From Lepidodermella squamata (lineage: Eukaryota > Animalia > Gastrotricha): a stretch of 64,000 nt of DNA. Below are positions 35,658 through 62,807 of this stretch, in pieces. The stretch lies in NCBI GenBank assembly GCA_047495785.1, contig JBLDXI010000025.1, forward strand, positions 1,364,001 through 1,428,000, written 5' to 3'. A model generated the notes under the pieces. The model made no database searches and was not told the origin of the DNA. It worked only from the letters and a program-made list of their open reading frames with translations. The stretch's first letter is position 1, and the number at the start of each line of letters is the position of its first letter. The translations under genes and the position numbers were made by a program.

Positions 35658-36160
35658 TACTGGAACATATACATTTTTAGGCTGATGGAATTTTTGTATG
35701 ATTATTCCTTGACAATTAAAATAAGAGAATTCTTGCCGCGTAAAGAACTGTGTCAATTCTCGGTTGACTGGGGTCAGGTGATCAATAATTGCAAACCGGG
35801 CTAGGTTTGATTCGATGGGGATTATTCGGTGCGCTATATGCCTACATCAGATTTCGTTGATTTTCAGCCTAGAGAAGTGACAACATTGAGAAAAATCCTT
35901 CTAAGCCGATGCCTTCCGTTCTACTTCTGTGCAATTGAGTTTTTTGAGCCACGCACTCGTTTATGATTCGTTTTACAATTGGCGTAGTAGCATCAAAAAT
36001 TGATTAATAACTTTTATTTTGTTTACCAGGAAAACACTTATTTACACCGGAATATTTAATTATCAACGGAAAAAGAATCGAAATTATGGTAGCAAAAGTA
36101 TCTATAGAAAGATAGAATTTCTGAAAAATCTCAAATTAGTATTTAAGAAGTAGTAATAGG

Positions 36161-37779
36161 TCAGTTCTCCGGGACACTGAAAATAGCCTTCAAAATAGCA
36201 TCTGGATCCAAAACTGCATATACCATGCGAGATTTCTCGTTGAGGGGACCTATCGCTACGAATTCTTCATGCTTCAGCCATTTCATGGCAATTCCCAAAT
36301 ATTCGGTTGGCGGCAGCTGTTTCACCGGCTTCGTGATCATCGAGAGGCACGAGGAGCCATCAACCGTTTCTAGCATCGCAAGCATGAGAGATCGCTGAGT
36401 TACGATACCGGCCAACTTCCCCTTTTGATCTCCTTCGACCAGCAGAACCTTTCTCGGTGAAGATTCAAGTAACTTGACAGCCTCAGCTAAGCAAGTCGAA
36501 GAAGGCACGGTAGGATACGGCTTTAGACGAAGATTCCCAAGCTGCAGCTGCCAGATTCCGTTCTTCAAGTAACGCTCTGGGACGGGCATCAAGTGCCGCG
36601 CGATTAGCCAATCATCATCCAGATGCTTTGTCATGTAATTCCTGATCGAGTCTGCGAAAATCACGACGCATCTGTGATGAGCCGCAAAATTTGCTTCTTT
36701 GCACGCCTTGATTGCAGCTGCGAGCGCACCGCCTGAGGAACCACCCGCTAAAATTGCTTCTTCCCGCATTAGACGGCGAGACATCTCGAAAACTTCCCGG
36801 TCGGGGATATAGTACCACTTATCCACAACTTTCGTGTCAAAACAAGCTTCAAAATACTAGTTTAGAGAAGAAGATAGTTGATCGAGACATTGAGACACTT
36901 ACCTGGGATGAAGTCATAGCCGATACCTTCTACTTCGAATGAGACACCCTTACCCGGAGCTGCTAAAGCTTCTGGGCCGACACCAACAACTAAACATCCA
37001 GGGATTCGATCTTTGATTCTTCGGCCGATTCCAGTTATGGTTCCACCAGTTCCAACAGCCACAACCACCATATCAACTTTTCCATCGCACTGCTCAATGA
37101 TTTCATCTGCTGTTCCGTCGTAATGCGCCAGCGGATTAGATGGATTGCGATATTGGTCAAGAATATGCGAATTTGGTATTAGCTCCAATAGCTCCTGATG
37201 ATTTCAAAGATAAATTCTAAGCTGAATTAAATTCTTCAGTCTTACCCTGGCTTTCATGTGGACAGATAATGGACTGTCGAAAGGAACTCCAGCTGGGGTC
37301 CTGATACATAGAGCTCCAAGGCCATTGATAGTCGCCTCTTTTTCATGGCTCATCTTGTCGGTCATAACTACTACCGATTTATAGCCTCGGGCCGCAGCTA
37401 CCAGGCACAGACCAATGCCTGTGTTTCCACTACTCGGCTCGATGATGGCATCACCGCTTTTCAACCGGCCCGAATCTTCCGCATCTTGAATCATTCTCAA
37501 AGCAATGCGGTCTTTGATTGATCCTCCAGCGTTGAAGTACTCGCATTTTGCCAGAACTTCACATTGCACTCCCTCTGATTTAGGGATGCGATTAAGCCGG
37601 ACAAGCGGAGTATTTCCGATTGCGTAGGTGATGTCTGGTAGTATCTTTGGTCTGACGGCTGTTTTCCTAGTTGAATGGACGAACCTTGAAGCCGGGCATC
37701 CAGCCGCCCATTTGCATTTTCTCGCCGATTCCTTCGGCTCAGTTGGCAAATCCCAAAGATCGCGCTCGTCAGTAGTCAT
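36161..37779 (-). CDS. CBS: Cystathionine beta-synthase (503 aa). Exons 37779-37246, 37194-36903, 36846-36161
   Basis: [24 protein letters not shown] (PLP lysine), [40 protein letters not shown]-terminal heme-type Cys/His (KCKW..VH) and a C-terminal Bateman module. Confidence 0.97.
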
Positions 37780-37814
37780 AATAATCTAAGAGTACCACAA
37801 AATTATTATTAACC

Positions 37815-39234
37815 TTAAGAATTATTCGCTAAGCGACGCATTAAACGTAAATAAGCAAAAATAATTTTGTCTTTAAAGGATTTGTCGTTTTTAGGAGTTA
37901 GAGAATCGTTTCGCTTCCCCTCGCCGTTCATTTTGTGTTCAGGATACAGGCAGTAATGTTGAACCATGAAGACAACATCGAAAAATATGGAAAATATCCC
38001 CATAGTGAACTTAGTAGCATTGCCAGTGATTGAGTTCCAATCATCTAGAATAAATTATCGGAGGTTTTTAGTGGTCAGAGGCCAAGTTCTTACCGAAGTT
38101 ATAGGCTAAAATGATCATTTGGATAAAACTGAAGATACCACCGACAAAATCTATGAGTGTTCCCCATATGCTCCAACCAGCAGTTGATTTCAAGGTGTAG
38201 TTCATGTAGACTTGCGGAAAGTACTTGATGAGCGATGCACATATCCTAATGTAGCTTAGCAGTTGAATCACCATCAGCCAATTTAGTTGACCAGCAGCTC
38301 CAACTGTGATAATGATGAACGCATAAAGCACGGCGACCGCAGCCAAGGCCTTGCAAACCCAAGAAACTCGTTTCCCACCACGCTATAAAAAAGCGAGATG
38401 GACATTATTATTTTAAATCTGAAAACAAACCTCGAAGACGGCGATTTGCACTACGGCAATCGATACCGCAGTCAGAGCGTGAACAACGTGGCAAACGTCC
38501 GGCAGGGTAACTGGAAGGCCTCCTCTTGGATTTAGCTCGTAATATTGCATCTGAAAAAGTGTTAATTCTCCTGTCCTCAAGTAAGTGATTGGCTTACGTG
38601 AATTTGCGAAGAAAAGTACAGGCTCATAATGTAGACGGCGTAGAACGAAAAACCAATGACGTTATAGGTTACGAAGTCGAAATTGTACCCAACTACACTT
38701 TTACGATAGAAGTTGAGGATCAACTGAGGCCAAAAGGCGACCGTGAATGCTGCGAAGTATATCCAGCCGATAATGTCGCTGAGAAGCACGAGCCAAGGCA
38801 CGCGGAATATGTTCACAGTGAGGTAGATGCTTGCCAAACTAAAAAGAAGCCAAGTTAAATTCTTGGAAATTGATCACATGTTACAATAAAAACTCAGTGA
38901 ATTGCGTTGAGTTGCTCCTCAAGCCCAGATACATGTGGCCACCGCTGTTGCCTACAACACTCATTGTGTAGTGGCTCGAATTCTGAGGCAGGGTTGCCGA
39001 AGAGTTGAAGTCGAAAACACAATCATTTCTTGGAATCTCACTTGAATCCCCGCCTTGGCAGTAAAATTCTATTTGCGCCTCTTCGACAAGAGGCTCACTA
39101 GAGCAGAATGAATTAGGGGGTTTGCAGCCTAACTCAATTCTAGCTCACCTTGCAACGAGTTTCACTAAATGGCTGTGGCCGACAGACATATCCAGCCGGC
39201 TGGGAACAAATTGAAAAGTCAAATTATTATCCAT
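37815..39234 (-). CDS. CTNS: Cystinosin (lysosomal cystine/H+ symporter, PQ-loop), ~389 aa. Exons 39234-39149, 39097-38894, 38838-38598, 38550-38431, 38382-38094, 38044-37815
   Basis: [56 protein letters not shown]. All junctions are phase-consistent. Confidence 0.95.
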
Positions 39235-39659
39235 AGCTGTAAATATCAAGTGTCAAGGAATGAGACCAAGCTGCATTGTCTCCAACCGTCAATAACCTGT
39301 TGCACTCGCAAAGAATTAACACGGGATGACCACGGCCTATTTCAATCTTTTGCCTCAATTCATCGACCGAGTGCGTTTCAGGTGCTTTTCAGGTGCGAGT
39401 CTTATCGAGTTTTTTGTTTATGATTCAACGCGGAAATTTACCGGTATGGTTGTACTGTTTCCACGTTCAGGAAACGCATTTATCCTGGGTAAATATTAAC
39501 GCGTCCTTCTTTCTGGGGCGTATTTTTACGCATGTCAAAGTAAATAAACATTGTACATGAACTATTTTTCAAAAAAGAGTGTCCTTGATTCGTACATTTT
39601 ATTTTCCATGAAAAATATGCGGAATATTTTTGAGGAAAATATATAAGCCAAAGAAACAG

Positions 39660-40805
39660 TCAAATTTCTTTTCCATCCAGGAACCAAAAATGTTGCCGCA
39701 GTGCCTCCATCTCCATAATTTCTTTGCCAGCCTTATCAGGATTGAGGCTCTTAGCCATGCACATAAGCACCATTCCTTTGAATAGTGTTGGCGAGACCAA
39801 GTTGCATTTGACTATTTGATCGATGAATTCTTCGTCTAGATTTGAAATAACACTGTCCAAAAATATGGTCAAAGCTTCTGCCTTGCCGTGCAAATTAGCG
39901 ACTAAATGCTCAACAGTCGCTTCGAAAAGTGGCAGGAAGTGACTTTTATCTCTCAAGGCAGTGTGAAACGGTAGCACAAGATGCAACCGCCACGACTCTC
40001 CAAGTGGCAAAGGTTTCTCGAAATAAGTGGGCATGAAGTAATTGAGAATAGAATTAAAAAAATTGCTCAGCCGTGCAGTAAACGGAACATGGACGAAAAT
40101 TTGCACTGTCGGGTCTTTCGTGGCAGCAACCATCAGCTCTGAGCCTAGATGCTTGGCTGTACAGACATTGCACGATACGGGAAAATTTTCATTTGGAAAT
40201 AAAAATGACTTTGGGAAGATTTTTCGTAAATAAGACTCCGATTCGGATGCATCCAGCGTTGTCACAAAAACACTGTTGCGAGGTCTAAATTTGAGAATTT
40301 CATGAACGCGGCTAATGTTAACGCCGCAACGTCTCGAAGTCCACATAGCTCTGTACTCGTTCTTGTTCAGAAATAGTTGCTGTGACACGTCATTATCCGC
40401 TGTGGTGAATGCATATATGAATTTAACTCCTTTTCTGCGTAGATCTTCTTCCATCGCCCTGATCAAACAATGCCCAATGCCCCGTCGTCTATGCTGAGAA
40501 TCGACCCTGAGGTTGAAGATGTATGATACTTTTTCATAGACCTGGTTATCTGGGTCGAACAGAACTTGGCGAATGTTGGCAGCCACACCTCCAACGACGC
40601 AGCCGGAACTCCGCTCTTCACAAAGAAGCAAATATGATTCTGCGAACTTGGCGTGACGAGGTGGATCAGCTCCCATACGGAATCTAAGACCCTTCCCCTG
40701 TGGATTTCGTTTTTCTAGGTCCGCAACGCTCTCCAGGTCAGATGAGCTGTTGTTGAATGGCCGTATGATGTAAGGATCACTGTTTGCATTTCGCTGATCG
40801 CCCAT
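39660..40805 (-). CDS. GNAT N-acetyltransferase, HOOKLESS1 (HLS1)-like, intronless (start could be up to 40880)
   Basis: Acetyl-CoA binding motif A LRVDSQHRRRGIG, followed by AMEEDLRRKGVKFIYAFTTADNDVSQQLF. Confidence 0.85.
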   Translation of the reverse strand: MGDQRNANSDPYIIRPFNNSSSDLESVADLEKRNPQGKGLRFRMGADPPRHAKFAESYLLLCEERSSGCVVGGVAANIRQVLFDPDNQVYEKVSYIFNLRVDSQHRRRGIGHCLIRAMEEDLRRKGVKFIYAFTTADNDVSQQLFLNKNEYRAMWTSRRCGVNISRVHEILKFRPRNSVFVTTLDASESESYLRKIFPKSFLFPNENFPVSCNVCTAKHLGSELMVAATKDPTVQIFVHVPFTARLSNFFNSILNYFMPTYFEKPLPLGESWRLHLVLPFHTALRDKSHFLPLFEATVEHLVANLHGKAEALTIFLDSVISNLDEEFIDQIVKCNLVSPTLFKGMVLMCMAKSLNPDKAGKEIMEMEALRQHFWFLDGKEI

Positions 40806-41518
40806 TGTCGGAAAAGAAAAGTTGAGCTGAGTCAATTCGAGCTCCAGAGTGCGCACAGGTATCGCATTACCACGCCCCATGCCGGATTTATTTGCTCTAC
40901 GCTGTTTGCTTGGCTGAAAATGGTATATTTGAAACACTTAACGAGCAACATGACAGAAAAAGTGTTCTCTTTTCAGACATTCCTATTTAGAGGCATCCTT
41001 TGAATCTATTGCTACTTTCCATAATCGTTAACGACACGCCAAAACAACCGCTTAGATGACTCATTCGAGCGTACTTTTGGTAGCCTACCGTAGTAACGAA
41101 GTACGTTAGGCCTATTGAGCACCGAACGTACTTTCCTCATAAAATCTATAAATAGTGTGTTTCGCCATTTTCGCGGCGACAAGGCCAAGGAACGCCCACA
41201 GAAATAATGGAGATCACAAAAATAAGACGCAATTGTATTTATTGCGATGTTCGAAGTTTGATTTTGAAAATTGAAATTAGGGTAGCTATTGCGAGTAAAT
41301 GAAGCTATTGCGGAATACTGAATCTCCATTTCATATTTCCAAATAAAGCCCAGAATTTTTATTGTATAACTTGAGCAATTTCAAAAATATTATTCTTGCT
41401 GCCAGTATACAAGAGGTTGCTAGAGCACGATTCGATACTCGATATACCATTCGAGACATTCACTCTTGAAGAAATCTCTTGAATTTATTAGCTTTCTATA
41501 AAACTAGGAGCATGCATC

Positions 41519-43051
41519 TCACAATTCATTTTTCACGCAATTTTTCGCCCATGTTGTCACGTTAACAATATTATAACCACGATTAGTTAATTGATCGGCG
41601 ATCTTTGATCCCATTGAGTCTGAAAAAGATGTATCTTCCTGAAGTCCTCCAATCTTTGCATCTCCTGCAAACTCCGCTATGTATGGCAGTCGGTAGTGAA
41701 TCATCCTGCCATCGCTCTTCTCATTCACGGTATAGGTCGAACCACCATTGGTTATGTCATGTACCGATAAATAAAGCACATTATCCACTCGAACTATGGT
41801 CTTATGGCGCCCATCCTGCGTTGCATGACTAGCGCGCCACGTCATATCGTTGATGCGGGAGTAAAGCGTTTTGTTACCAGGATTTCGACACCCAGCTGGT
41901 TCCATATCTTTAGAGCCGAAAAACCAGTTTTTGAATACGATTCCGCCAAGGTTCCCACCATTGTCGCTGTTAATTGCCTCTAGATAATCGATTAAATTTG
42001 AAGCTTTCTTTGAGTTGGTCGACGGATATAGCTGAAAGAACTCATCAGCGTCGAAGAACGCAAGCCAGTCAGCCTTACCTGGAAATTGAACAATTGAGCA
42101 ATACCATAAGAAATCATTGCAAATTGAGCACTCACCTTTCAGCCGATACAAACAATCCATTTGGGACACTTGTTGCGACCATTTCCCCAGGTATTCCACA
42201 GGGGCGTAAAAGTAATACGGCGCAACTTGGGCGATTTTCAATTCATTCACGTATACATAGAGGAATTCTTCGAAACCAGTAGATGAAGGCTCATTGACAT
42301 AGATGATGAAGTAATCGAAGCCTACTAATCTGTGGTACTCAATCCACTCCGGAAGCCTGTCCAGTTGATCATTTGCGACGAGGGTGCAAGCTGCCAGGCG
42401 GAATTTGGGCTTCGGAAGTTGGAAGTTGCAAGATAAAAGATCCCGCCCGTGAGGGTTAAAATTCGGCCTATTCGTCGCCGTCAAATTGTAGCGGACACCG
42501 TTTTTGTAGATGTCGTCGATGAATAAAGGCGATCCATCGAGCGGACATTCCAGGGTAAGGGTCCAAGTGTGAAGATCGGCTTCGCCCTTATTATTGGTAA
42601 CTGCGGAGCAAGGTACGCTATGGCCATTGCTCTCTAGCAACCATTGAGTCTTTTCAACCCAAACCTGGTAGTCTTTCATCTTATTCACAGAGGAGACCTT
42701 AACTGATGGGTTTATCGATTCGCACATGAAAACGACGTTGGCAACAGTTCTGCCTTCTAAGCGCCGATAAAATAGGCTCCCTGGTACGGGTAAATGTGGC
42801 TGGGTGATGTATGCACGCCTTGCGTTCGCCTCATTGTTAAAACGGCGCCGACATTCGGCGAAGGACAGTAGTGACCATTGCTCGCGGGCAGCATCCAAGC
42901 TCGTCGCGTTTTTCGAGAGAACCATCCTCTCGCGTGCGATGTTACTTTGAATGTTGCCAAGTTGTATCAGTATACAGATGGCAATAGCCAATACGCATAG
43001 CATTCGGGTTGCAGTTAGACAGCAATATCTAGGCTGCCAATATTGAATCAT
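41519..43051 (-). CDS. Glycosyltransferase family 92 (DUF23) type II membrane protein. Exons 43051-42136, 42078-41519
   Basis: N-terminal TM anchor, LAACT..EWIEYHRLVGFDYFIIY, Q..DCLYR and the WLAFFDADEF (DxD) motif. A 57-bp in-frame GT-AG intron is present. Confidence 0.88.
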   Translation of the reverse strand: MIQYWQPRYCCLTATRMLCVLAIAICILIQLGNIQSNIARERMVLSKNATSLDAAREQWSLLSFAECRRRFNNEANARRAYITQPHLPVPGSLFYRRLEGRTVANVVFMCESINPSVKVSSVNKMKDYQVWVEKTQWLLESNGHSVPCSAVTNNKGEADLHTWTLTLECPLDGSPLFIDDIYKNGVRYNLTATNRPNFNPHGRDLLSCNFQLPKPKFRLAACTLVANDQLDRLPEWIEYHRLVGFDYFIIYVNEPSSTGFEEFLYVYVNELKIAQVAPYYFYAPVEYLGKWSQQVSQMDCLYRLKGECSICNDFLWYCSIVQFPGKADWLAFFDADEFFQLYPSTNSKKASNLIDYLEAINSDNGGNLGGIVFKNWFFGSKDMEPAGCRNPGNKTLYSRINDMTWRASHATQDGRHKTIVRVDNVLYLSVHDITNGGSTYTVNEKSDGRMIHYRLPYIAEFAGDAKIGGLQEDTSFSDSMGSKIADQLTNRGYNIVNVTTWAKNCVKNEL

Positions 43052-50600: not shown

Positions 50601-52117
50601 CAATCATTAACACTAACTAAAAAATGATAACTAAGAATGAGAATTCATCGTCAACGTTAAAACAGCTAGTGACCGGGATGGTTTCTTCCCTTGTTTTATT
50701 CTTCGACCCTTTTGGGCGACCTCCAGGCATAATTGTTAATATTGTTGAAATATGGCAATATTAATATTGTTATTAAGTCTATAATTTTGATGTAATGAAT
50801 TTCAATTAAAATAAAATCAATTAATATTAAAATGAAAGATGAGGATCAGAGTGTCAAATTTCAAGGTTATTTCTCGAATTCAAAATGTAAAATTATAATT
50901 ATTATGTCAGTATGCTAGTATTTTTCGTCTTGAAAATGTGTCACACCCTACGCGCCAAAAATCGCCTGAGGGCAATTATAACGCTGTTTCCATCTTTGTG
51001 CTGTTCCGTCGCTTTTTCCCGCTATATCGAGTATTTACTTGATATCTTTAATATTCTTCTGCTATCGGATAGCAGAAGAAAGCTGATGATCTAGATCTAG
51101 GCAGGTCCTGCCTAGATCTAGATCATCAGCTCATCAAGATACATCTAGATCCCCTATTGTTGCGCTTTTAAAACTTCCTGTTAATGAAAAATAAATATAG
51201 TATCCTTTTATGTGTCACCGGGCAACAGGGAGCCAATGCGCAACCCGCAGACCACCGTTTTTTGAAATAAACGATTTTGTGTTTTATTATTACTGTATCG
51301 TATGCGGGTTGCATTTTTATATTTTTATATTTTTTGGTTTTACCTGGTAAAATTTCGTAGTTGAAATCTTTCGAGAAGATGTCTAGCGCGTGCATGTACG
51401 TCGGCTGTTCGACGAAAACTTTTCCGCCGGGCAGCGGGCCGAGAATCCCCGGCAAATAGCTCAGCGTGTGCGAGGAGCCGGCCATTACGAACAGCCAATC
51501 GGCTGACACGCCGGTCCGGTACCGCCGGCTTAAAAACAACGAAAGCTGTTCTCGACAATTTTTCGGCCCTGGATTGTCGTTGCCGTAATCGAGAACTTCC
51601 GACGCAGACATATGCTGTTGGGCGAAAAAATAATTCATCAGTTCTTCGACGAAAATTCATCTCGAAAGACTTTCCTGATTTCAATGTTCAAGGAAAAACC
51701 CAATAAAATATTTTTTACAACAACATGAATTCAATTTTAAAATTTAAAAATTCAAATTTTGAAAGTTTTAAGAAATTTCAAGCCAAAATGTGCAAGTCGA
51801 GCGAATTTAAAATTCTCATAGTCTTGAAATTCCATTGAAAATTGAAATTTTTGCAAAATCCAAAAATCAAACATTTCGAATTTCGATTCGACTTAAAAAC
51901 CAAAATGTTGACAATTTTTGAAAATTCAGAAATTTTGAAAGGCTTTAATTCGAAAAATTAGAAATCGTACTGAAAAACTTACCTTAAACAGTGTTTCACT
52001 CGTTTTTGTGACATATTTCGAAGAAGCTTCGAGAATTTCCGGCGGCGGCATTCCGCTGGCTAGGTCGAGAAGCGGCGCCGTTGCCGTTGCGGGTTTGGCG
52101 ACTCCGTTTTGTGTCAT
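44652..52117 (-). CDS. PLP-dependent aminotransferase class I/II (2-aminoadipate/kynurenine transaminase-like), 430 aa. Exons 52117-51983, 51614-51344, 47782-47302, 45057-44652
   Basis: LDLASGMP, VEQPTY, FANPGG, ADDVY, GSASKLIGPGLRFGW (PLP lysine), PQGGYFIW. Junctions are phase-consistent. Confidence 0.92.
45600..46524 (+). mobile_element. Decayed Crypton-like (tyrosine-recombinase/DUF3504) transposon in aminotransferase intron 3
   Basis: The translation LNFQLSRFVTEIRTQEGDHYAGSSIVSHIDNIFSYL matches the Crypton/ZMYM-type core-binding motif. Downstream HRRYGILTRL..FFGMQARSL resembles a degenerate recombinase C-terminus. Stops and frameshifts are present. Confidence 0.55.
48200..48450 (+). mobile_element. 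MULE (Mutator) transposase fragment
   Basis: IIGCYFHFCQAILRKLAFLGL..Y..RRCMALAL, the CxFH signature of MULE DDE transposases. Confidence 0.8.
48450..49201 (+). mobile_element. Non-LTR retrotransposon fragments (LINE ORF2 pre-RT linker; R2/NeSL-like segment)
   Basis: RRAKWRQKV..DPRKLWKIV and NRKQVVRQIM..QCPIT..LSTAF resemble pre-RT motifs. Confidence 0.45.
49287..49918. mobile_element. Non-autonomous TIR DNA transposon, copy 2 (inverted relative to copy 1)
   Basis: Same 33-bp TIRs. The interior is homologous to 30984-31548 in reverse complement. Confidence 0.88.
51081..51131. repeat. Perfect 25-bp-arm palindrome
   Basis: AGCTGATGATCTAGATCTAGGCAGG-T-CCTGCCTAGATCTAGATCATCAGCT. Confidence 0.9.
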
Positions 52118-52548
52118 AGCTATAGGCTGGAATTGGTAGTAATTGCGGGTTAGGGGTAAGGCGGGTAAGGGGGACCAACAACCAGAACACCGGGATGGGT
52201 TAGTATGGGGACTTGCTACCCACGGGAGGTTACTAGAAAAATACACAGATTTTCTGACGCCAATCCGCTGGAAAATTTTTAACATAATGGTTTACCTAAA
52301 TAAAAAATTCAGAAAAATTAAATCAAATTAAGAAAGAAAAATCCTGATTATTTTATTGCGAAAATTCTGGAAGAGTGAAATTGCATTTCTCCATCACGAT
52401 AAAAACCTCTTAAAACATTACAATAAAAATGAGTAAAACCGGCCTATATTTGGCATAATTATGCGTTACATTATCATTATAGTTGCAATCGCTATTTCAT
52501 CGATAAAACAACTTTGAAAGATTCGATAAAAGTCCTGCGGTGGTTAAA

Positions 52549-55500
52549 TTACAAAAAAGCAACGCCCGACCCGCCTCGAGCACTCAGTCGTTGCAGTGCG
52601 ATGATAGGCGCCTCGAAAACAAGTGAAAACAACGTCGCGGCGATGAAAGTAACGCACAACAAGCCGCAGAAGAGCACAGCCATGGTCAGATCAGCGACGT
52701 GAAACACGCGCTGCGAGGTTTGCGAGAAGTACAGCAGGATGAACGGGTGAATTAAATACGCCGAGTACGTGAGTTTCGCCGGCAGGGCCCAACCCGGCCA
52801 GGATAGCACTTTTCCGACCGGCCCGGCGCGGTTCACGACACAGGCGAGCACGAGCCAGCCGAGGGCGGCGCCCCACGCCGGTCTAGCCACTGCATGGTAA
52901 ATAGCGTTCACGATTTTCGGGTTGACGTAGTAGCCGGCGTTGGTTCCGAACTGGCCGTAGACGACCAGGCCCATGGTTGCGATGCATAGAGACCAGAATA
53001 GCGTGGGTAGGTAGGGCCGGGCGAATAAATTGCGGGTTAGGTACAGCGAGTGTTTGACGACAATGTGGCCGAACATGATACCGACTACGTATGGGCCGAG
53101 GCGGCACCATGGTTTCGTGTAAATTGCGTTGAAGTAATCGTGAGGATCAGCGCCAGTCTCCGGGGTGCTGCAATGATTAAAACAACAAAACGTAAAATGA
53201 ATGTAACAAGCACTTGGAGTGTAGACGTAAAATGAATGTACTTGGCAAAAAAGACCCCACACGTTCCAAGTCCACTTAAAATTACACGTGAAATTTTATC
53301 AATGGAAAACCTTCAATCCAATATAAAAAATTAGAAAAAATTAGAAAATTAAAAAATGTTGTAAAATTTCCCAAAAAATTAGCACTCATCAAAGCGAATA
53401 AAACTTCATCAGTAAAACCTGAAAATATGTTGTAGACGTTCAACACATCAATATAGGTAACGTCTTGGTTCAATAAAAAGCGAAAATTGCGACTTCACAC
53501 TGCCGCAGACTGGTTAGAAAATTATATTGTAGCTAATTTCATCATGTATCATTTTTAAATAACTTTACCTCAAAAATGAGTGGCAAAATGAAATTTTCAA
53601 ATTTTTGCAATTTATTATTGCAATATTTGATAGAAGCAGGCTAGCTTTTAGGAAAAATAGCTCCCCGAAGCCACGAAGCTACGCACTTCGTATGAGCTCG
53701 AATATTATGCGAACCAAAAAATCGCAAAAAAAGCTGAAGTTAAATTGTTCCTTATATTCTTCCAGCCAGTGATATGAATTCAGTTGTTTCTGCTTAGAAG
53801 GGCTAACAAAATTGTCATTTGGCTACGAAAATGTTTGAAGTTGAAAGAAGAAGGTTGTGGTTGGATCTGGTTTTAATCAAACCGGAGTAACATAAGGGCT
53901 TTTTCGCCCCATTCGCTAATTTACAGTTGTTTCCCCAAATTTAAGTAAAACCCAGTCCTTAAATCAGAACACCTAAGTACATTCGACATTCGATAATCTG
54001 GTTCGCTTTTTCTCCCAATTAAATTGGTATTTTGTTAGCTTGTAACTTAATTGTTAACTGTCTCTATGGCTCTTTCTATCGGGGCGATAGAGGCGTTGAT
54101 TGAGAAGACGTTAGCCAAAAAAATAGATTCCGTAGTTAGCGCATCAGTCAAAACTAGCCCTGGGCCTCCCCGAAGAAAACTAGTAAAGAGCACACATTTT
54201 TTCTCCAGAAAAAGGCGACACGAGGCTCTATCGGCAAATTTTCGTATATGCAAATAGGAGGCATGCGCTGCTTTGAGATATCAAATCCAATAAAAAAAAT
54301 CTCATCAAATTCACAGTGCTTAACACTTCACAGATTTTAAAGTTCTTCAAGCATTATACAAAAAAAATTTCTCAGAAATTCCAAGTATGCTCTTGTCTTC
54401 AACTCATCCCCTTTACACGCAAGTAAAATTATTAGGCTTACACAGGGGCTGTGGTGTTGCTTGGCATCGCGAACATTGTCGGCGCAACATCGTAGACCAT
54501 AGTAATCGCCATGGTAGAAGCGATTTGCCCAGCCAGCGCTAGAAACGCCGCAGCCCAGCCAACTTTCGGCCGCCAAGCGAACAGAACAACAAGAAACGGC
54601 GCAAACACGAAGAACTGCATGTCATTCGCGAGGTACCATCCCCAGCCAACACAGCCCGTGTTCGAGAAGAAGTTGTTGATGTACAACAAATTGGTCCACC
54701 AGTAGTCACGGCACAGCTCATCAACGCCCTGGAAATAGGTCGGGCCATTGCCGAGATGCGCCCACAGGCCTAAATCGATCAGAATTATAACGACATACGG
54801 CGGGGTGAGGCGAATTAATCGATGTAAATAGACGAAAGGCAGCGTTTTCCAGAACCAAAATCGCGATTTAGTCTGCTGGTTTTTGTGGCTATGGAACAAA
54901 TCGAAGTGTTTCGACAGCGACCAATATGCGAAAAATCCGGATAGGAAAAAGAACGTGTCAACAGCGTACAGCCCGGATAGGACGAATTGAAACGAGAAAC
55001 GCTTCATCCAACTCGAGGCGACTAACAAATTGTCGTAATAGCCAATGTAGAACGCGAAAACGTGGCCGAGAACGACCCAAAACATGCTGAGGGTTCGAAT
55101 TGCGTGCAGCGAGCTGAGATTCGGAATTTGTTGAGACCACGGCGGTAGTGTGCATAGTTTACCCATATTCGTATAGGGCGAGAAGCAGATCAGCACTCGG
55201 GCTAATTTTCGCAGGAATAACGCTGGGCTGATCGAGCTGATTTTGACGCCTGGGCGGTATTGGTGGCCGGTTTGAACGTGGTTAACGAGTTCGGGCCGTT
55301 CAATGCCGTTTCCTAGGCCGTTGCCATGCCCGTTTTGGCCGGCGATCGGGAAGGCTAGACTGGCTGAATCGCCGTCGCAAAGAGCCGCGGCTAGCAGTTC
55401 TTCGTCGATCGTATCGCCGCCGGATCGATGATTTGAGGTGTTGTTATTTCGGTGGCGAGATGAGCCATTTCGAGCCTGGTCGGGTAGGAGATTCGAGTAG

Positions 55501-56842
55501 CCACTGGCGATTGTGGCACCGTCGCCGAAAACCATGTCGGTTACGGAGGAATTGGCGGTCGCTGATTTCGCCCATGAGTTGGCCCAATTGCGGCATCGAA
55601 GGATCACGTCGATTAGGAAACCGAGCAAGACGAAAAAGCCAATGGCACCCATAACTCCGCTGAAAAATTAAGTCAGAATTGTACAAAAATAGTAAAAAAT
55701 TACTATCGTTTGATAATATGATCGATCCAAAATTATCAAAAATATATTCGATAATCATTCGAAATGATCATTCTTGATTTTATTGGAATTCAAATTAATT
55801 TTGAAAAATTAAAATATTGAGAAACTGAATTTCCTAAAAAAATTGGCGAGCTAAATGATAATCGAGCAAGGCGAAATTGTAATAAATCGCAAAAGTCAGA
55901 GAAATTAGGGCTGAGATTTCAATTGTAGACCCGAAAAAAGTGACGCGAGATCTCCTAAAATTAATGAATCTCAGAAAATATTTTCGAACTCACATGGCAA
56001 TGTAGGTATATTGAGTAACGGGCGGATCTTGGAGTTGGCAGTAAGACCATTGGGACGAGTAATAGACTCCAACATTCGAAGGAACTAAGAATAAACATTT
56101 GATTATATTTTAAGGCATTCATTTCTGAATAAAACCTACTCAGAGCAACAAGAATAGCGCCCAATGCATCAACTGAGCAAGTTTTTGGCACGCAAAGGCC
56201 AAGAGTCAGCGCTTCGCCAAACATCATAATTGTTTGAGGCTGAATAGTTTCGTTGGCTTGATTCGTCAGGCCAATGTGGCAATATTGTGGTTCGATTGTC
56301 AGATTTTTCGAAAGCCTTTGCGGCTCGATGTGGGTACATTCATCGAAATCGCCCATCCACATGAGCGCTCCATTCATAATACCAGGCGGCGGTTTGGTCC
56401 ACGCATCCAAATCTAGAAAAAAATCCAATAAATTTATCAAAATGTTGAGCGACAACATATTCAATTTTATTGAAATTAATTTTAAATTTCAACAAAAATT
56501 AAAAATGAAAAATATTTTTCCAAAATACTTACATTGCAAAGCCCATGTTTGCTTCCCTGGATAGACTGAAATTGCGATTTTTTCAAGGCTTTCCAGGCAC
56601 AATTTTTCGTCGTCATTCTTCACCGCAGACCACAGCGATGAAAAATTGACGTCAGGCGTGAGAAGCGGAAAAATTTCAGCATTCAACAACGAATCCTCAG
56701 TCATGGGATTGGCTTGCAGGGTCACATCTCGGCCCAGTACAGCTCGCAAGTACGACGCACTCGGCGATTTGTGTCTCAACGTGTTTTGCGCTGATATTGG
56801 CGCAAGGAAACAAGTCAGCAACAAAAATTTGAACAAAATCAT
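52549..56842 (-). CDS. nrf-6: Nose resistant to fluoxetine-6 / O-acyltransferase-like protein, copy 1. Exons 56842-56533, 56412-56140, 56084-55994, 55659-54442, 53167-52549
   Basis: Signal peptide, NRF domain (DAWTKPPPGI..G..W.GDFDEC, LGLCVP..CS) and acyltransferase-3 motifs (IRTLSMFWVVLGH, VDTFFFLSG, HRLIRLTP, WYLANDMQF, YTKPWCR). Confidence 0.93.
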
Positions 56843-57030
56843 AGTAACAACTAAAAATAGAAAATCAAGGTGAGATACGAAAAAAACGTCGTCTAAATTT
56901 GATCAAAAAATGAGGCTGATGCACATAAGAAAAATGGTTTTGTTGTTTGATTTTAGGCTTAAAATGAAAGATCCAACAAAAGTTGAAGATTCCTCGATTA
57001 AAATCATTAACAAAAAGGCTAAAAATAAGT

Positions 57031-60000
57031 TTAGATCTGATGATTATTTTCGTGTTGCTGAGCAGCTGAGAAACTTTGAAAGCGTGGTCGAACGTAGAAA
57101 CGTTGCAGTGAAAGAATGGGCGATTCGAAGAGCAGCGAGAATAAAATCGAGGCGAGGTAGGTTACGGCTAGGGTGCCGCAGTAGAACCACGTCATGACGA
57201 TATCAGTCGCGTGAATCGGCCTTCGGCTCGTTTGAACGTAGTAGATCAGCAGTAATGGGTGTACAAGATACGCCGAATAGGCCAACTGAAAAATTAAATT
57301 AAAAATTAAAAATCGCATAATGAATGAAAATTCGGTTGAGCGTGTCATTTTATAGCCGGATAGCTCAGACATAAAGATGATACGATGAGAAATACTTATG
57401 CCTTAAAGGGGTCATATCTAGAACAAAAGCAGCGAACATGCCATCTCGGATGGACGCAGATGTTACTAGTAAACAAAGGCGACAGTTGTTTTGACCTCGG
57501 CTGCGGACAAGACAAAAATCGTCCTTAAAATGTGAAATTTCAGAAAATTGAATAATTTATCGGCCAAGATATCAAATTAAATAGACGAGGCCCTCTGTAA
57601 TGTTCCTAATATCAAATCTTAGTGAGAATAATTCCTTGAGCGGAATCTTAATTTTAAATTTTCTCATTTTTTCCCGGAATTGTCCAGTTTAGAGGAGCAA
57701 AAAGCCATCAACTCAAAGGTTTTATTTACGTCGCACTAATGTGACAGTTGGACGTGCCAAAAATTTTTGACCTCAACTACGGACAAGGAGACGGTGCAAA
57801 CTTTACGCATCAAGTCATAAATGAAACTGAACTCACGGAAGAAAAAGAAAAATTAAATTATTTTATAAAAATTAGAATATTAACAAATATTCATTTTTCG
57901 TTTGGATTCATGATTTAACAAACTTCAGAAACTTTCGAACAAATCTCAGAAAATGAAAAAAATGGCTATTTGGATCTCGAAACGTGCAGTGGTTATTTTC
58001 CACCTTTTCGGACTACCGTAATTTTTACTCGATCCTGGGCCTCTATTCGCAAGGTGCCCGTGGCTTTTCAGCTGATCAAAGATAAATTGTCTGACGCTGA
58101 TGACTGAAATATAAACCGCTCATCGAATATTTTGAGCGATAGCGCTACTCTAAAGTAAATTGTGAGGGAAGGAATGTGTCAACCGAATCAATTCGGACAA
58201 ACAATTTTGTGGAGGGGTGAAACTACAAGATCAATCGATTCACCTCGGTTTTTGGCGGTTTGTAGCCATGCTGCTATTGATTTAATTGGCAAATCTCAAA
58301 TCCGAATCTCAACCAATTCAAACAAAATTCCCAGGTCGAAACTCATGATGAAAACGATAACTCCACGGACTACTTTTTCATAATTATAGGACTACTCTAA
58401 AGCAGCCGTAAAATAACGTAAGGCAACGAAGCAGCCTAAGAAAAATTCGACTTTTCTGGCTGCGCAAAAATCTTTCATTTTAGTGTCATTTTTCTGCAGT
58501 AGTCCCCATAATTTTGAACGAAAATTAACTCTGGGTGATGTAAAATGGAAGTTATCAATTTTTTGCGAAATTTGGATAGGAATAATAAATAATAAATAGG
58601 AATTAAATTTAAAACTGAAATATAAATTCGAAATAGTGTTTTGTTTACCTTAGCGGGAACTGCCCAACCTGACCAGGCGAGAAATTTGCAAACCGGCCCC
58701 GCGCGGTTAGTGACTGAAGAAATGACAATCCAGGCAATAGCTAGGGCCCACAGTGTTCGAGACAGCGAGTTGTACATGGCGTGGACTACGGGCGGGGCTT
58801 CGTAGAACTGCGCGTATTGGCCCCACTGGCCGAAAACTAGCATGACAATGGTGATGGTGGCGGCTATCCACAGTAGTATCGATATCGTAGGTGTCAGAAG
58901 TCGTTTCAGCAAAGCGGCTCGTTTTGCGATGAGGAACCCCGTAGTCAGACCAACGATGTAGGGAGCGATCCAGCATAGTGGTTTGATATAGATCATGTCG
59001 AAGTAATGGGCAAAGTCAGATTCTGGCGTCAACTCCCTGAAAAATTGAATGAAACCTCAATAAACACGAGTACAAATCGAAAATTACTAAAATCGAAATA
59101 AAATACCAAATAATGCCAATTTGTCTGGCATATTTTTCATTCTTCGGAGATATCGCGGTTAAATGGATCAATCTTCAAATCGAATGCTGAATTGCATTCG
59201 GTTCATGTGCTACTTTCCCCTGGTGTATAACCTTAAGAGAGCTTCGGGAAAAAGATGGCCAAACAATTTTTCTTCGTCAAGAAACGGCTTCGACTAGGCC
59301 ACATGCCAACTGGCTGGGACCTATTCCGAATTCAAGCAGCTCAATTCGTTCCCATAGCCGAACCGGGGGACGAGTTTTCTGAGTTCAAGGACTACTTCCA
59401 AGCCACATAAATGGGCAGCCCGCTCGATCTCTGGTTTGAAGGATGGCCTGGTTCCTAATTTTCGACAAACAATGGCCTTCGAGGCAGCCAATAGTGTTTT
59501 GAAGAATGAGAATACTGAACGGGTATTGCAGACAGTAGCAACTTCCTGGCGATAACTTCCGAGATAATCGATAGTTGGACGTCAAACTGGGCCGAATGGG
59601 CAGCAAAACCGATTGATGGATGGCTCGAAGTGTATCAGACTGGCTACCTCTACTTTTTGAAGTCATCTGATCATTTCAGTAAAATCGACGATGGCAAGCG
59701 GCTTAGGGTGCTAGCAGCTTGTAACCCATGGAAAAGCTGGCCGACGAAGCAAAGCTGCTTCAGCTCTGGTTCGCCAGCCGTCGCCCGAACGGTCGAATGC
59801 TGAATTTTGAATTTTTCGACACTCGACAAACTATCTGTAAATATGTTGTCACTTTCAAAACTATATAAATAACTTTTGTTGCTTCCTGTTGGTTAATAAA
59901 CAATCACTTGTGCGCTCGCCTATAATAATGCTAATAATCGTTCCCAAAGTGGCTGTTGCTCAAGTGGGGGTTGCTCATCTGGGGGAAAGCCCAATTACAC

Positions 60001-62807
60001 TTTTATCTATTCGAGTCTCTTGTTGAATGTCTTGTCGACTCGAGCTCTTTCGATGAATCAATTGCTCACATTCGGACATATTTAGGAGGATATGAATGCT
60101 ATTGCTTGAATTTAAATAATCATACTATCTCAAATTCAATGAATTAACGATATTAAACCGCATAGCCAATATAATCTCACAATTCACTTCTGAATTCTCA
60201 AAACTTGCATTGAAAATTAGACATTTCGAACTAAAACTAGAATATTTTCGAAGTATAATTTTCTTGTCAGAATAATTTTCTTTTCTCAGAAAATTATTTT
60301 ATTCTTTAGAAATTATTTTTTTTAGCAGAAAGACATTTTTCCGCCAGAAAACATATTTTTCCTGCCAGAAAAGAAAAATATTAGCGAAGTTGTCATTCAT
60401 TTCATGGCAACTACTCGAATATTCGAACACGATAATTATACCCGGTGCAACAGATGCTAGTCATTGTGTCCTATTTTTGCGGGGAGGTCATTCAAGAAAA
60501 GGCTAGTACATTCAACCTTTCGACTTACGAACCCGAACAATAAATTCCTTTCGCTCACATTTTCATATAATAAATGTCAGAGCTTAGTTTGTCGCTGGAG
60601 AAAATTTCAATCTACCTAAAATATTGAATCCCATATATTGGATAAAGGCGAGCAGATTCAAAGTTGTATGTATTGTTAGGAATTTTTTATGAGGCGAAGT
60701 CCTGGGATGAAGCGAGGGGCATTCTTGGGCAAAGTATACGATGTTCACCCCGGACAGCGCTAGGGATTTTTCATTCTCAGCTAGCGCGGGGACTTCTTAC
60801 ATATACATTTTTCGGTTACACAATTTGTGTCTTGGGAATCGTTCGAATTAGACAATAGTGTCTAATCACTGACTGATGTGCGGAGAAGTGTATCACGTTA
60901 ATTGGCCATCGCTAACGCCAAGCAATCTTTACCGTTCGGAAACAGAATAGTTACCGGTGTTACCGGTACGGCAGCATTCTGAGAAACAATTTCAAACGGA
61001 AAAATACGTTTCAACGTTTCTACAATTTGGGAAACTTTTCGTAGTTTTACCGTAGTGCTACGGAAAAACGGCATTAGCAATCGTAATTAAAAATAAATTA
61101 AATTTTTCTGAAGAAAAAAATATGGTCCATATTTTCGGGAAAAGCTTGGAATTGGCACCATTATTTCCAATATTGCGATTTTAAAAATTATGGCTTAGTA
61201 GGAGAAAATCTCCGCAATTTAATTCAAATTTACATTAAGTTGCTGCTCAGTAATATGAGATTACTTGGGTTCTTCCAAGTCTCAATACAATTTCTAATTT
61301 CGACCACAAATTTTCCCAAGCATAGAAACTGTAATGAAAATGAATAAATTAGAAAATGAAATTGATTAGCAGCAAATTATGCATGATAAATTGGCCAAGA
61401 AAATGCTCTTTCCAACACCTCTCAATACTAATACTTTAATGTTCTGATGGTAATAATAACAATAATGATAGCTAAACAAACCAATAGTAATCAGCGCTAG
61501 CTGGAAACGATTCTGACAGCAGCGTTACATTGCCATACGCTTGAATGTCTGCGAACAAAAGAGAAAAAAAACCACCGATTTTAATTGACAGGTTAACTAC
61601 TACAACTACTTACCCTGCATATCAGGCAGCAGCGTTGAAGGCAGGCGGAATACAACCGTCAAAACGGCGGCAATCAACGCTTGTAACAACAGCACGCCCA
61701 GCGTCAAATACACAGCAACATTTCCCCAGCGTTGAAACGCGAAAATGGCGAAGGGCGCCGCTAAACTCAGCTGCATATCAACGGCCAAGTACCACGTCCA
61801 GCCGACGCACATGCGCGTTGAATGCACCAAATTGTTGACGTACAACACGTTTGTCCACCAATTCTCAGCGCAGTACTCGTCCAAGCCCTGGTAGTACCAC
61901 GGGCCGTTGCCCAGATACGGCCACAGGCACAGGCTTATCAGAATTACGACGAAAAGCGGCGGGGTTAATCGGATAAATCGGTTGAAGTAAATGATGGGTA
62001 GTGACTTTAAAAAACTCTGTTTTGGGTCTGCGTAGAATTTCAACGTGTTAGCTAGCGTCCAGTACGATAGGAAACCGGATAGGAAGAAGAACGTATCGAC
62101 GCCTAAAACACTTCCGAGGACGATTTGATGGCCGAGCGATTTCCTCATATCGAAAACGGTCTGCAAATTATCGAACCCGATTTGGAGGAAAAAGTAGCAG
62201 TGGGCTAGAACGACCCAGCCGAGGCTCAGGACTCGCAGCCCGTTCAGACATTTCAAACTATCCGATGATTCAGTTTTAACCGGGCTATTAACCGTGAAAA
62301 GTTTGCGTAAATTCGTGTAAAGCGAAAAGCAGACGATGAAACGGAACAACGCGGCGAATCGGTGTATAGACGATGAGGGTACTGAGCTGAGGGACCGTGA
62401 TACTTTATCGTCGCCGGTGCTATCTTGCGGTGTTATCATCGATTCGCGTAATGTAACAACTTGTGTCAACATGATAACGTTTGTTGCGTGTTGTTGTTGC
62501 GGCGTCGACGGCGGCGGTGTTACAATTTCTCCGGCCGTTTGAGATATAGCCGAATTCAGCGCGCGGCTTTCTCGAATTTGAATTGTTACGTCGAAAATTG
62601 TGGCGAAAATCACCAGAAAGCCCCAAATTGCCAAGAAAATTCTGAAAAAATCGGCTTATTATTGCCGTTTCGGATATCGATAGAAATCATACATTGCGGA
62701 TTTTGCTTTCCAGTCAAGGGGTATTTCATTTTCTTGGCACTGGGTCGCATGAGGCGCGAGGTGGATATCCTTCAAAATCGGGTACTGAATTCGGGCTTGC
62801 GGCAGCG
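57031..62807 (-). CDS. nrf-6: NRF-6/O-acyltransferase-like protein, copy 2 (5' exons lie outside the window). Exons 62807-62693, 62641-61614, ~59036-58649, 57285-57031
   Basis: GLRVLSLGWVVLAH, VDTFFFLSG, NRFIRLTP, WYLAVDMQL, YIKP, LAYSAYLVHP. One junction is phase-discordant at its best splice sites. Confidence 0.85.
59170..59720 (+). mobile_element. Decayed MULE transposase fragment
   Basis: RFMCYFPLVYNLK and EFKDYFQAT*..WFEG..STNNG..ANSVLK motifs, with stops and frameshifts. Confidence 0.6.

What the first reader, a model, noticed from the sequence alone, without database searches (positions are those of the whole stretch)
36161..39240. Cystinosin and cystathionine beta-synthase only 35 bp apart: candidate animal cysteine-homeostasis operon
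Seen: on the minus strand the CTNS stop (37815) is separated from the CBS ATG (37779) by 35 nt. The gap has no AATAAA and no room for a promoter, but it has a TCTTAG acceptor 6 nt before the ATG. Known: CTNS exports lysosomal cystine, CBS commits homocysteine to cysteine/H2S, and animal operons are resolved by SL trans-splicing. Inference: a dicistronic, functionally coherent unit coupling cysteine salvage with de novo synthesis. I know of no description of this linkage.
Basis: partly seen in the sequence, partly recalled or inferred. Interest (0 to 1): 0.85.

Follow-up and report, generated by a model that had tools for sequence, protein, structure and literature searches.

The report
Cystinosin and CBS genes 35 bases apart
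In a compact animal genome (probably the gastrotrich Lepidodermella squamata), an intact cystinosin gene ends 35 bases before a divergent cystathionine beta-synthase gene, which fits a spliced-leader operon, but no RNA data cover the junction and the closest relative found lacks the pairing.

Summary
On the minus strand, a 6-exon cystinosin gene (389 aa, stop 37817-37815) is followed after exactly 35 nt by a 3-exon CBS gene (503 aa, ATG 37779). A CTCTTAG acceptor lies 6 nt before that ATG.

The operon reading is plausible but unproven. The gap holds only AATAAT hexamers. The next AATAAA on this strand lies after the CBS stop. Five of seven Pfam-backed gene starts in the window carry a lone acceptor within 35 nt of the ATG (P=0.011). 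Earlier notes of this scan, on other DNA of this genome, report leader-RNA genes and many operon-like clusters. I did not verify those notes.

The only RNA-like run has almost no coverage at the junction, so neither co-transcription nor a leader on CBS is shown.

The "cysteine-homeostasis unit" reading is weakened. The window's CBS is the fast-evolving B copy of an old duplication. In the closest relative found, B sits behind CBS-A, with no cystinosin in the 4.1 kb upstream. Three other spiralians and 80 metagenome CBS loci also lack the pairing. The linkage is therefore young and lineage-specific, and chance juxtaposition is not excluded.

Verdict: a likely new member of a known kind. Interest is moderate to low.

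The parts
37815..39234 (-). Cystinosin (CTNS, SLC66A4-type) gene: 6 exons, 389 aa, stop TAA at 37817-37815. The C-terminal tail carries a YLRL tyrosine-type sorting motif.
   Evidence: Gene model. Pfam PQ-loop twice. Best PDB matches are all cystinosin, E 5e-27. The spliced exon 3/exon 4 junction is seen in run X1 as a loose end at 38705.
37780..37814 (-). 35-nt gap between the CTNS stop and the CBS ATG. It is the whole candidate 3' UTR of CTNS plus the 6-nt 5' UTR of CBS.
   Evidence: The X2 contig 37686-38003 shows no difference inside the gap.
37786..37792 (-). CTCTTAG: candidate 3' splice (trans-splice) acceptor. The splice would join a leader to 37785.
   Evidence: Read directly from the sequence. 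It resembles the cis acceptors of this locus (ctctag, ttctag). Chance expectation is 9-22%.
37802..37831 (-). Three overlapping or adjacent AATAAT hexamers, starting at 37826, 37810 and 37807. They are the only poly(A)-signal-like hexamers near the CTNS stop.
36161..37779 (-). Cystathionine beta-synthase gene, B paralogue: 3 exons, 503 aa. It has the heme ligands Cys and His, the PLP lysine motif SIKDR, and a C-terminal CBS/Bateman region.
   Evidence: Gene model. Pfam PALP plus CBS domain. Human CBS E 1e-55. It groups with the relative's CBS-B at 100/98 support.
36013..36018 (-). First canonical AATAAA downstream of both genes, 143 nt after the CBS stop. An ATTAAA lies at 36060.
   Evidence: X1 contigs cover 36072-36145, so the CBS 3' UTR reaches at least 36072.
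39235..39241 (-). TTTACAG acceptor 2 nt before the CTNS ATG. This is a candidate leader acceptor for the first gene of the pair.

Best explanation
Two intact genes lie head to tail: cystinosin, then a divergent CBS paralogue.

Most likely (inferred, not shown), both are transcribed from a promoter in the roughly 360-420 nt upstream of cystinosin. The precursor would then be cut at or just before 37786. Cystinosin would be polyadenylated using the weak AAUAAU signals around its stop. CBS would receive a spliced leader at the CUCUUAG acceptor, giving a 6-nt 5' UTR. This is a zero-spacer operon junction, as in Ciona operons and the SL1-type operons of C. elegans.

The pairing arose in this lineage after an older CBS-A/CBS-B tandem duplication. 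It is not an ancient cysteine-homeostasis module.
For: The 35-nt gap and both reading frames are confirmed.

There is no AATAAA on this strand from the last CTNS exon until 36018, beyond the CBS stop. The neighbouring genes GNAT, GT92 and CBS each have AATAAA 30-143 nt after their stops.

AATAAT at 37810/37807 lies 16-24 nt before the acceptor, the usual signal-to-cleavage distance (established knowledge).

Five of seven Pfam-backed gene starts in the window have a pyrimidine-rich YAG within 35 nt before the ATG (binomial P=0.011). Spliced 5' ends are therefore the norm here.

Earlier scan notes on other DNA of this genome report leader-RNA genes, a leader seen on some mRNAs, and many tight gene clusters. 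These are leads that I did not verify.

The two operon types, with and without intercistronic sequence, are described in PMC12582326.

The tree and the relative's locus show that the linkage is derived.
Against: No RNA read or contig covers the junction. X1 depth is 0-0.11 over 37540-37907.

The acceptor is expected by chance in 9-22% of such stretches.

A promoter inside the cystinosin gene cannot be excluded.

The pairing is absent in the closest relative found.
Confidence: 0.5

Rival explanations
1. The genes are independent, overlapping transcription units. CBS has its own promoter inside the 3' part of the cystinosin gene (last intron or exon). Cystinosin transcripts end in or beyond the start of CBS. 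The 35-nt spacing simply reflects genome compaction. The CBS 5' end may still be trans-spliced.
For: The genome is very compact, with introns of 47-56 nt. Internal promoters are known even in real C. elegans operons (established knowledge). The pairing is not conserved. The acceptor is not significant on its own.
Against: Cystinosin has no canonical poly(A) signal before the end of CBS. No recognisable core promoter element is seen by eye in 37815-38100, though that is weak evidence.
Confidence: 0.28
2. Both genes share a cis-spliced 5' exon, as at the cholinergic VAChT/ChAT (unc-17/cha-1) locus. A common non-coding first exon upstream of cystinosin would be spliced either to the TTTACAG acceptor of CTNS or to the CTCTTAG acceptor of CBS.
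For: Both ATGs are preceded by an acceptor, at 2 and 6 nt. GT donor-like sites exist in 39235-39660. An earlier scan note found that one checked 5' end in another cluster was an ordinary intron (unverified).
Against: This would need a 1.5-kb intron in a locus where all seven introns are 47-56 nt. No such junction appears in the available contigs.
Confidence: 0.08
3. A mature bicistronic mRNA is made, and CBS is translated from it by reinitiation or internal entry.
For: There is no canonical poly(A) signal between the genes, and a shared AATAAA follows CBS.
Against: Reinitiation after a 389-codon ORF is very inefficient in eukaryotes (established knowledge). The frames differ, and a second stop follows one codon after the first, so readthrough fusion is excluded.
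Confidence: 0.05
4. One reading: the pair is a selected, functionally coherent cysteine-homeostasis operon that couples lysosomal cystine export to CBS chemistry.
For: Both proteins act on the cysteine pool. The literature connects cystinosin-dependent cystine efflux with cysteine metabolism (10.1101/606541, PMC6562400). The 129 nt around the junction show no difference between the window and the roughly 2% diverged X2 contig, where about 2.8 differences would be expected (P about 0.06).
Against: The closest relative found has CBS-B behind CBS-A with no cystinosin. None of Lineus, Lottia, Bugula or 80 metagenome CBS loci shows the pairing. In a genome with many tight pairs, a few functionally suggestive ones are expected by chance (my estimate). 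The linked CBS is a divergent paralogue of untested activity.
Confidence: 0.12

Closest known systems
Ciona intestinalis operons and C. elegans SL1-type operons (no intercistronic sequence)
   Same: The genes lie on the same strand. The upstream gene's 3' end signal sits immediately before the downstream gene's trans-splice acceptor. The downstream 5' UTR is a few nt long. See PMC12582326.
   Different: Here neither the poly(A) site nor the leader junction has been observed. The poly(A)-like hexamer is AAUAAU. The phylum (probably Gastrotricha) has no published record of trans-splicing in the searchable literature.
C. elegans SL2-type and Schistosoma mansoni operons
   Same: A polycistronic precursor is resolved by spliced-leader trans-splicing, and the genes are mostly unrelated in function.
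   Different: Those operons have about 100 nt (median 99 nt in S. mansoni) between the poly(A) site and the acceptor. Here the whole stop-to-ATG distance is 35 nt.
Cholinergic gene locus (unc-17/cha-1; VAChT/ChAT)
   Same: Two functionally linked genes are expressed from one locus using splice acceptors in front of each ORF.
   Different: That locus uses a shared cis-spliced 5' exon and a nested arrangement. Here the genes are strictly tandem, and a 1.5-kb intron would be atypical for the locus.
Animal heme-containing CBS (human, Drosophila)
   Same: It has the PALP fold, the heme ligands Cys and His, the PLP lysine and a C-terminal Bateman region.
   Different: This is the fast-evolving B paralogue. 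It differs at 34 of 142 columns that are invariant in 12 other animal CBS, against 14 for the A copy. It has lost the CXXC motif and has a short deletion in the 'DPEGSI' region.

Membership tests
Spliced-leader-resolved animal operon | Two or more same-strand genes with a gap too short for a separate promoter and terminator | tested here: met
   35 nt from stop to ATG, with both ORFs intact.
Spliced-leader-resolved animal operon | The organism carries out SL trans-splicing (SL RNA genes, leader on mRNAs) | not tested
   Only earlier scan notes on other DNA of this genome say so. Rfam found no SL RNA in this window. Indirect support: 5 of 7 gene starts have a lone acceptor before the ATG.
Spliced-leader-resolved animal operon | The downstream gene's mRNA carries the leader at the acceptor | not testable with these tools
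   The only RNA-like run (X1) has depth 0-0.11 over 37540-37907.
Spliced-leader-resolved animal operon | A polycistronic precursor spans the junction | not testable with these tools
   No RNA contig crosses 37780-37814.
Zero-spacer (Ciona / SL1-type) operon | The poly(A) site of the upstream gene abuts the trans-splice acceptor | tested here: inconclusive
   AATAAT lies 16-24 nt before the acceptor, and there is no AATAAA until after CBS. The cleavage site itself was not observed.
Cystinosin (SLC66A4, PQ-loop family) | Two PQ-loop repeats with the conserved PQ motifs, and closest to cystinosin rather than other PQ-loop proteins | tested here: met
   PF04193 twice. All four PDB matches are cystinosin or a cystinosin homologue. 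The motifs FWPQ and YFPQ, and the LIDF aspartate that aligns with human LLDF, are present.
Cystathionine beta-synthase (animal, heme type) | PALP catalytic core with the PLP lysine, N-terminal Cys/His heme ligands, and a C-terminal CBS-domain pair | tested here: met
   PALP plus a CBS domain, only one CBS repeat above threshold. Alignment to human CBS covers Cys52, His65 and the SxKDR motif. Enzyme activity was not tested, and the sequence is divergent.
Conserved metabolic operon | The gene pairing is retained in related genomes | tested here: not met
   In the closest relative's contigs L081/L082, CBS-B follows CBS-A, with START-domain genes and no CTNS in the 4.1 kb upstream. The pairing is also absent in Lineus, Lottia and Bugula within 10 kb and in 80 metagenome CBS loci.

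The most novel reading that the evidence does not exclude
After an old CBS duplication, the fast-evolving CBS-B copy was captured directly behind cystinosin in this gastrotrich lineage. It is now co-transcribed with cystinosin as a zero-spacer SL operon. Lysosomal cystine release and a specialised CBS activity (cysteine-consuming, H2S-forming or cysteine-forming) would then be expressed in lockstep. That would be a rare animal operon with metabolic logic, in a phylum where trans-splicing is unpublished.
Probability: 0.12. Interest if true: 0.6.

Novelty: new member of a known kind. Interest (0 to 1): 0.35.

Why it matters
If co-transcription were shown, this would be one more SL-type operon junction in a phylum (probably Gastrotricha) where the process is unpublished. 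It would be of the rarer zero-spacer type. It would also be one of the few animal operons whose two genes touch the same metabolite pool.

As it stands, the scan has already flagged many operon-like clusters in this genome, and this pair adds only the functional coincidence. The more solid new facts are these:
- This lineage has two old CBS paralogues.
- The copy next to cystinosin is the divergent one.
- The linkage is young.

Tried and rejected
1. RNA evidence. Only two runs hold the stretch. X1 is cDNA-like, with short palindromic contigs from a slightly diverged strain, and leaves 37540-37907 uncovered. X2 is DNA.

2. Exact-sequence look-ups of window ORFs (SLC20, CBS exon 1) found nothing on record.

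3. The full spliced proteins could not be given to the search tools because no reference exists for a spliced sequence, and I did not type them in. I searched exon pieces instead:
- CBS exon 3 against the representative library gave no hit above 46% identity.
- CTNS exon 5 gave no hit in the allowed length range. This says nothing about full-length relatives.

4. The metagenome scan with CBS exon 1 returned 80 loci. None is a close relative, and none has CTNS beside CBS.

5. A CTNS-CBS fusion by readthrough or by splicing to the CTCTTAG acceptor is rejected. The frames differ, a second stop follows one codon after the first, and the two GT sites in the last CTNS exon would give out-of-frame products (read).

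6. A crude whole-window scan for tight ORF-to-ORF junctions was too noisy to use.

7. Rfam and tRNA scans of the window found nothing.

8. Literature searches found no paper linking cystinosin, CBS and operons, and none on trans-splicing in gastrotrichs.

Full report
**What is there**

On the minus strand, a cystinosin gene ends with TAA at 37817-37815. A cystathionine beta-synthase gene starts with ATG at 37779.

I built both gene models by script.
- CTNS has six exons: 39234-39149, 39097-38894, 38838-38598, 38550-38431, 38382-38094 and 38044-37815. It encodes 389 aa, with introns of 47-55 nt.
- CBS has three exons: 37779-37246, 37194-36903 and 36846-36161. It encodes 503 aa, with introns of 51 and 56 nt.

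Both identities check out.
- Pfam finds two PQ-loop repeats in the first gene, and PALP plus a CBS domain in the second.
- For CTNS exon 5, the only solved structures matched are cystinosins (E 5e-27).
- CBS exon 1 matches human CBS at E 1e-55. The alignment covers the heme ligands Cys52 and His65 and the PLP-lysine motif.
- The cystinosin tail ends with a YLRL tyrosine-type motif, so the stop codon is credible.
- The relative's two CBS genes align from residue 1 of the window's CBS, so the ATG is credible.

A fusion protein is excluded. The frames differ, and a second stop follows one codon after the first.

**Which genome**

Earlier notes of this scan name the gastrotrich Lepidodermella squamata as the probable source. 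The published assembly has 122 Mb, 157 contigs and 43% GC (PMC11660948). That agrees with the scan's 147 pieces and roughly 1,990 windows, and with the window's 41.6% GC. I treat the identification as probable, not proven.

**RNA evidence**

Only two public runs hold this stretch.
- X2 is DNA. One of its contigs, about 2% diverged from the window, spans 37686-38003. The juxtaposition is therefore real and not an assembly chimera. None of that contig's seven differences falls in the 129 nt around the junction. About 2.8 would be expected, so this is suggestive at most.
- X1 behaves like amplified cDNA of a slightly diverged strain. A loose end at 38705 carries the spliced exon 3/exon 4 junction of cystinosin, which confirms that intron and shows the gene is expressed.
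- X1 depth is 0 to 0.11 across 37540-37907.

The junction is therefore simply not observed. There are no spanning reads, no leader and no poly(A) site. Both reads tools were then at their caps.

**Sequence signals**

The acceptor CTCTTAG sits 6 nt before the CBS ATG and resembles the cis acceptors of this locus. On its own it is weak evidence. A comparable pyrimidine-rich YAG is expected by chance in 22% of 35-nt stretches and 9% of 12-nt stretches of this window.

Two other observations are more telling.
- Five of seven Pfam-backed gene starts in the window have such an acceptor within 35 nt before the ATG: CTNS at 2 nt, CBS at 6, an acyltransferase at 7, SLC20 at 25 and GNAT at 33. The binomial P is 0.011. 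Spliced 5' ends therefore seem to be the norm here.
- The only AATAAA on this strand, from the last cystinosin exon onward, lies at 36018, 143 nt past the CBS stop. The neighbouring GNAT and GT92 genes have AATAAA about 60 and 30 nt after their stops.

Cystinosin has only AATAAT, at 37826, 37810 and 37807. The last two lie 16-24 nt before the acceptor, the usual signal-to-cleavage distance. This layout matches operons without intercistronic sequence, namely Ciona operons and C. elegans SL1-type operons. Operons with roughly 100-nt spacers are the other known type (PMC12582326).

Earlier notes on other DNA of this genome report leader-RNA genes, a leader seen on some mRNAs, many tight same-strand clusters, and a recurring "poly(A) hexamer / ~30 nt / TAG acceptor / ATG" module. 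These are unverified leads. I confirmed only the lone-acceptor pattern, and only in my own window.

**Is the pairing conserved?**

The closest CBS sequences in the libraries I could search come from two ENA metagenome contigs, L081 and L082. They overlap at about 98.6% nucleotide identity over 3.5 kb. They are 58-64% identical to the window's CBS at the protein level, while all other animal CBS are 44-52% identical.

In that relative, CBS is a tandem pair.
- CBS-A is intronless.
- CBS-B follows it after about 470 nt. It carries an intron at exactly the position of the window's intron 1.
- The 4.1 kb upstream of CBS-A holds two START-domain genes on the other strand and no cystinosin.

A maximum-likelihood tree places the window's CBS with CBS-B (support 100/98) and CBS-A as their sister (100/100). 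The duplication therefore predates the split of the two animals. The window's gene is the B copy. Because tandem duplicates arise side by side, A-B adjacency is the older state, and the cystinosin-CBS-B adjacency is a later, lineage-specific rearrangement.

The B copies evolve fast. The window's protein differs at 34 of 142 columns that are invariant in 12 other animal CBS. CBS-A differs at 14 and the relative's CBS-B at 29. The catalytic motifs I checked are kept, but the activity of this copy is untested.

Run X1 also contains a spliced CBS-like transcript that diverges from the window after exon 2 (IPAVLDRKIVD against the window's [11 protein letters not shown]). It has far higher nominal depth (decoded). 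This is most simply a second CBS, perhaps the A type, in that animal.

Other checks also found no linkage.
- No PQ-loop gene lies within 10 kb of CBS in Lineus, Lottia or Bugula.
- None of 80 metagenome or metatranscriptome CBS loci has cystinosin beside CBS.
- No paper links the two genes in an operon.

**Reading**

- Most likely (about 0.5): a two-gene, zero-spacer SL operon, with a promoter in the 360-420 nt between GNAT and cystinosin. Every processing step is inferred.
- Main rival (about 0.28): an independent CBS promoter inside the cystinosin gene.
- Minor rivals: a shared cis-spliced 5' exon (about 0.08) and a true bicistronic mRNA (about 0.05).
- The further claim that the pairing is a selected cysteine-homeostasis unit gets about 0.12. 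It overlaps with the operon reading rather than adding to the other odds. The biochemical link is real in general. But the linkage is young, it involves a divergent paralogue, and a genome with many tight pairs will contain a few suggestive ones by chance.

**Verdict**

- This is a likely new member of a known kind.
- The scan had already found operon-like clusters on other DNA of this genome.
- Interest is moderate to low until RNA data cover the junction.

Noticed in passing
window 36846-36903 (CBS exon 2/exon 3 junction), run X1: X1 holds a spliced CBS-like transcript that matches the end of exon 2. It then continues with a different exon 3 sequence (IPAVLDRKIVD) at much higher nominal depth (145 against about 1.7). 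This suggests a second, perhaps dominant, CBS gene (A type) in that animal.
   Followed up: partly
L081:850-4413 and L082:4179-6992: The closest relative found (unidentified, from ENA metagenome assemblies) carries a tandem CBS-A/CBS-B pair. A is intronless. B has a 65-nt intron at the same position as the window's intron 1. A TTTTCTAG acceptor lies 38 nt before the B start codon.
   Followed up: yes
window 39660-43051 (-): Upstream on the same strand are a GNAT acetyltransferase ORF (39660-40937) and a GT92 glycosyltransferase ORF (41519-43051). Both are single-exon, and each has AATAAA soon after its stop. Four co-oriented genes therefore sit in 7 kb. The GNAT was flagged separately by the scan as a transfer candidate (s1-394217).
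   Followed up: no
window 41036-41200: There is a high-copy repeat boundary. X2 depth jumps to about 5,750, and many loose ends fall at 41123 and 41156 in both runs. This is probably a transposable-element end.
   Followed up: no
window 39149-39234 (-): The cystinosin model starts without an obvious signal peptide ([15 protein letters not shown]...), although the N-terminal roughly 100 aa carry several N-glycosylation sequons. I saw no upstream coding exon in 39235-39660.
   Followed up: partly
window 51168-62634 (-): A cluster of at least three Acyl_transf_3 (NRF-6-like) ORFs lies on one strand (52549-53262, 54438-55652, 61606-62634). One of them has a TTTTTCAG acceptor 7 nt before its ATG.
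   Followed up: no
window 35700-41200, run X1: X1 contigs are short (79-202 nt) and full of 'opposite strands' joints 70-140 nt apart. This pattern fits palindromic amplification artefacts, so this run is a poor source for transcript ends.
   Followed up: no
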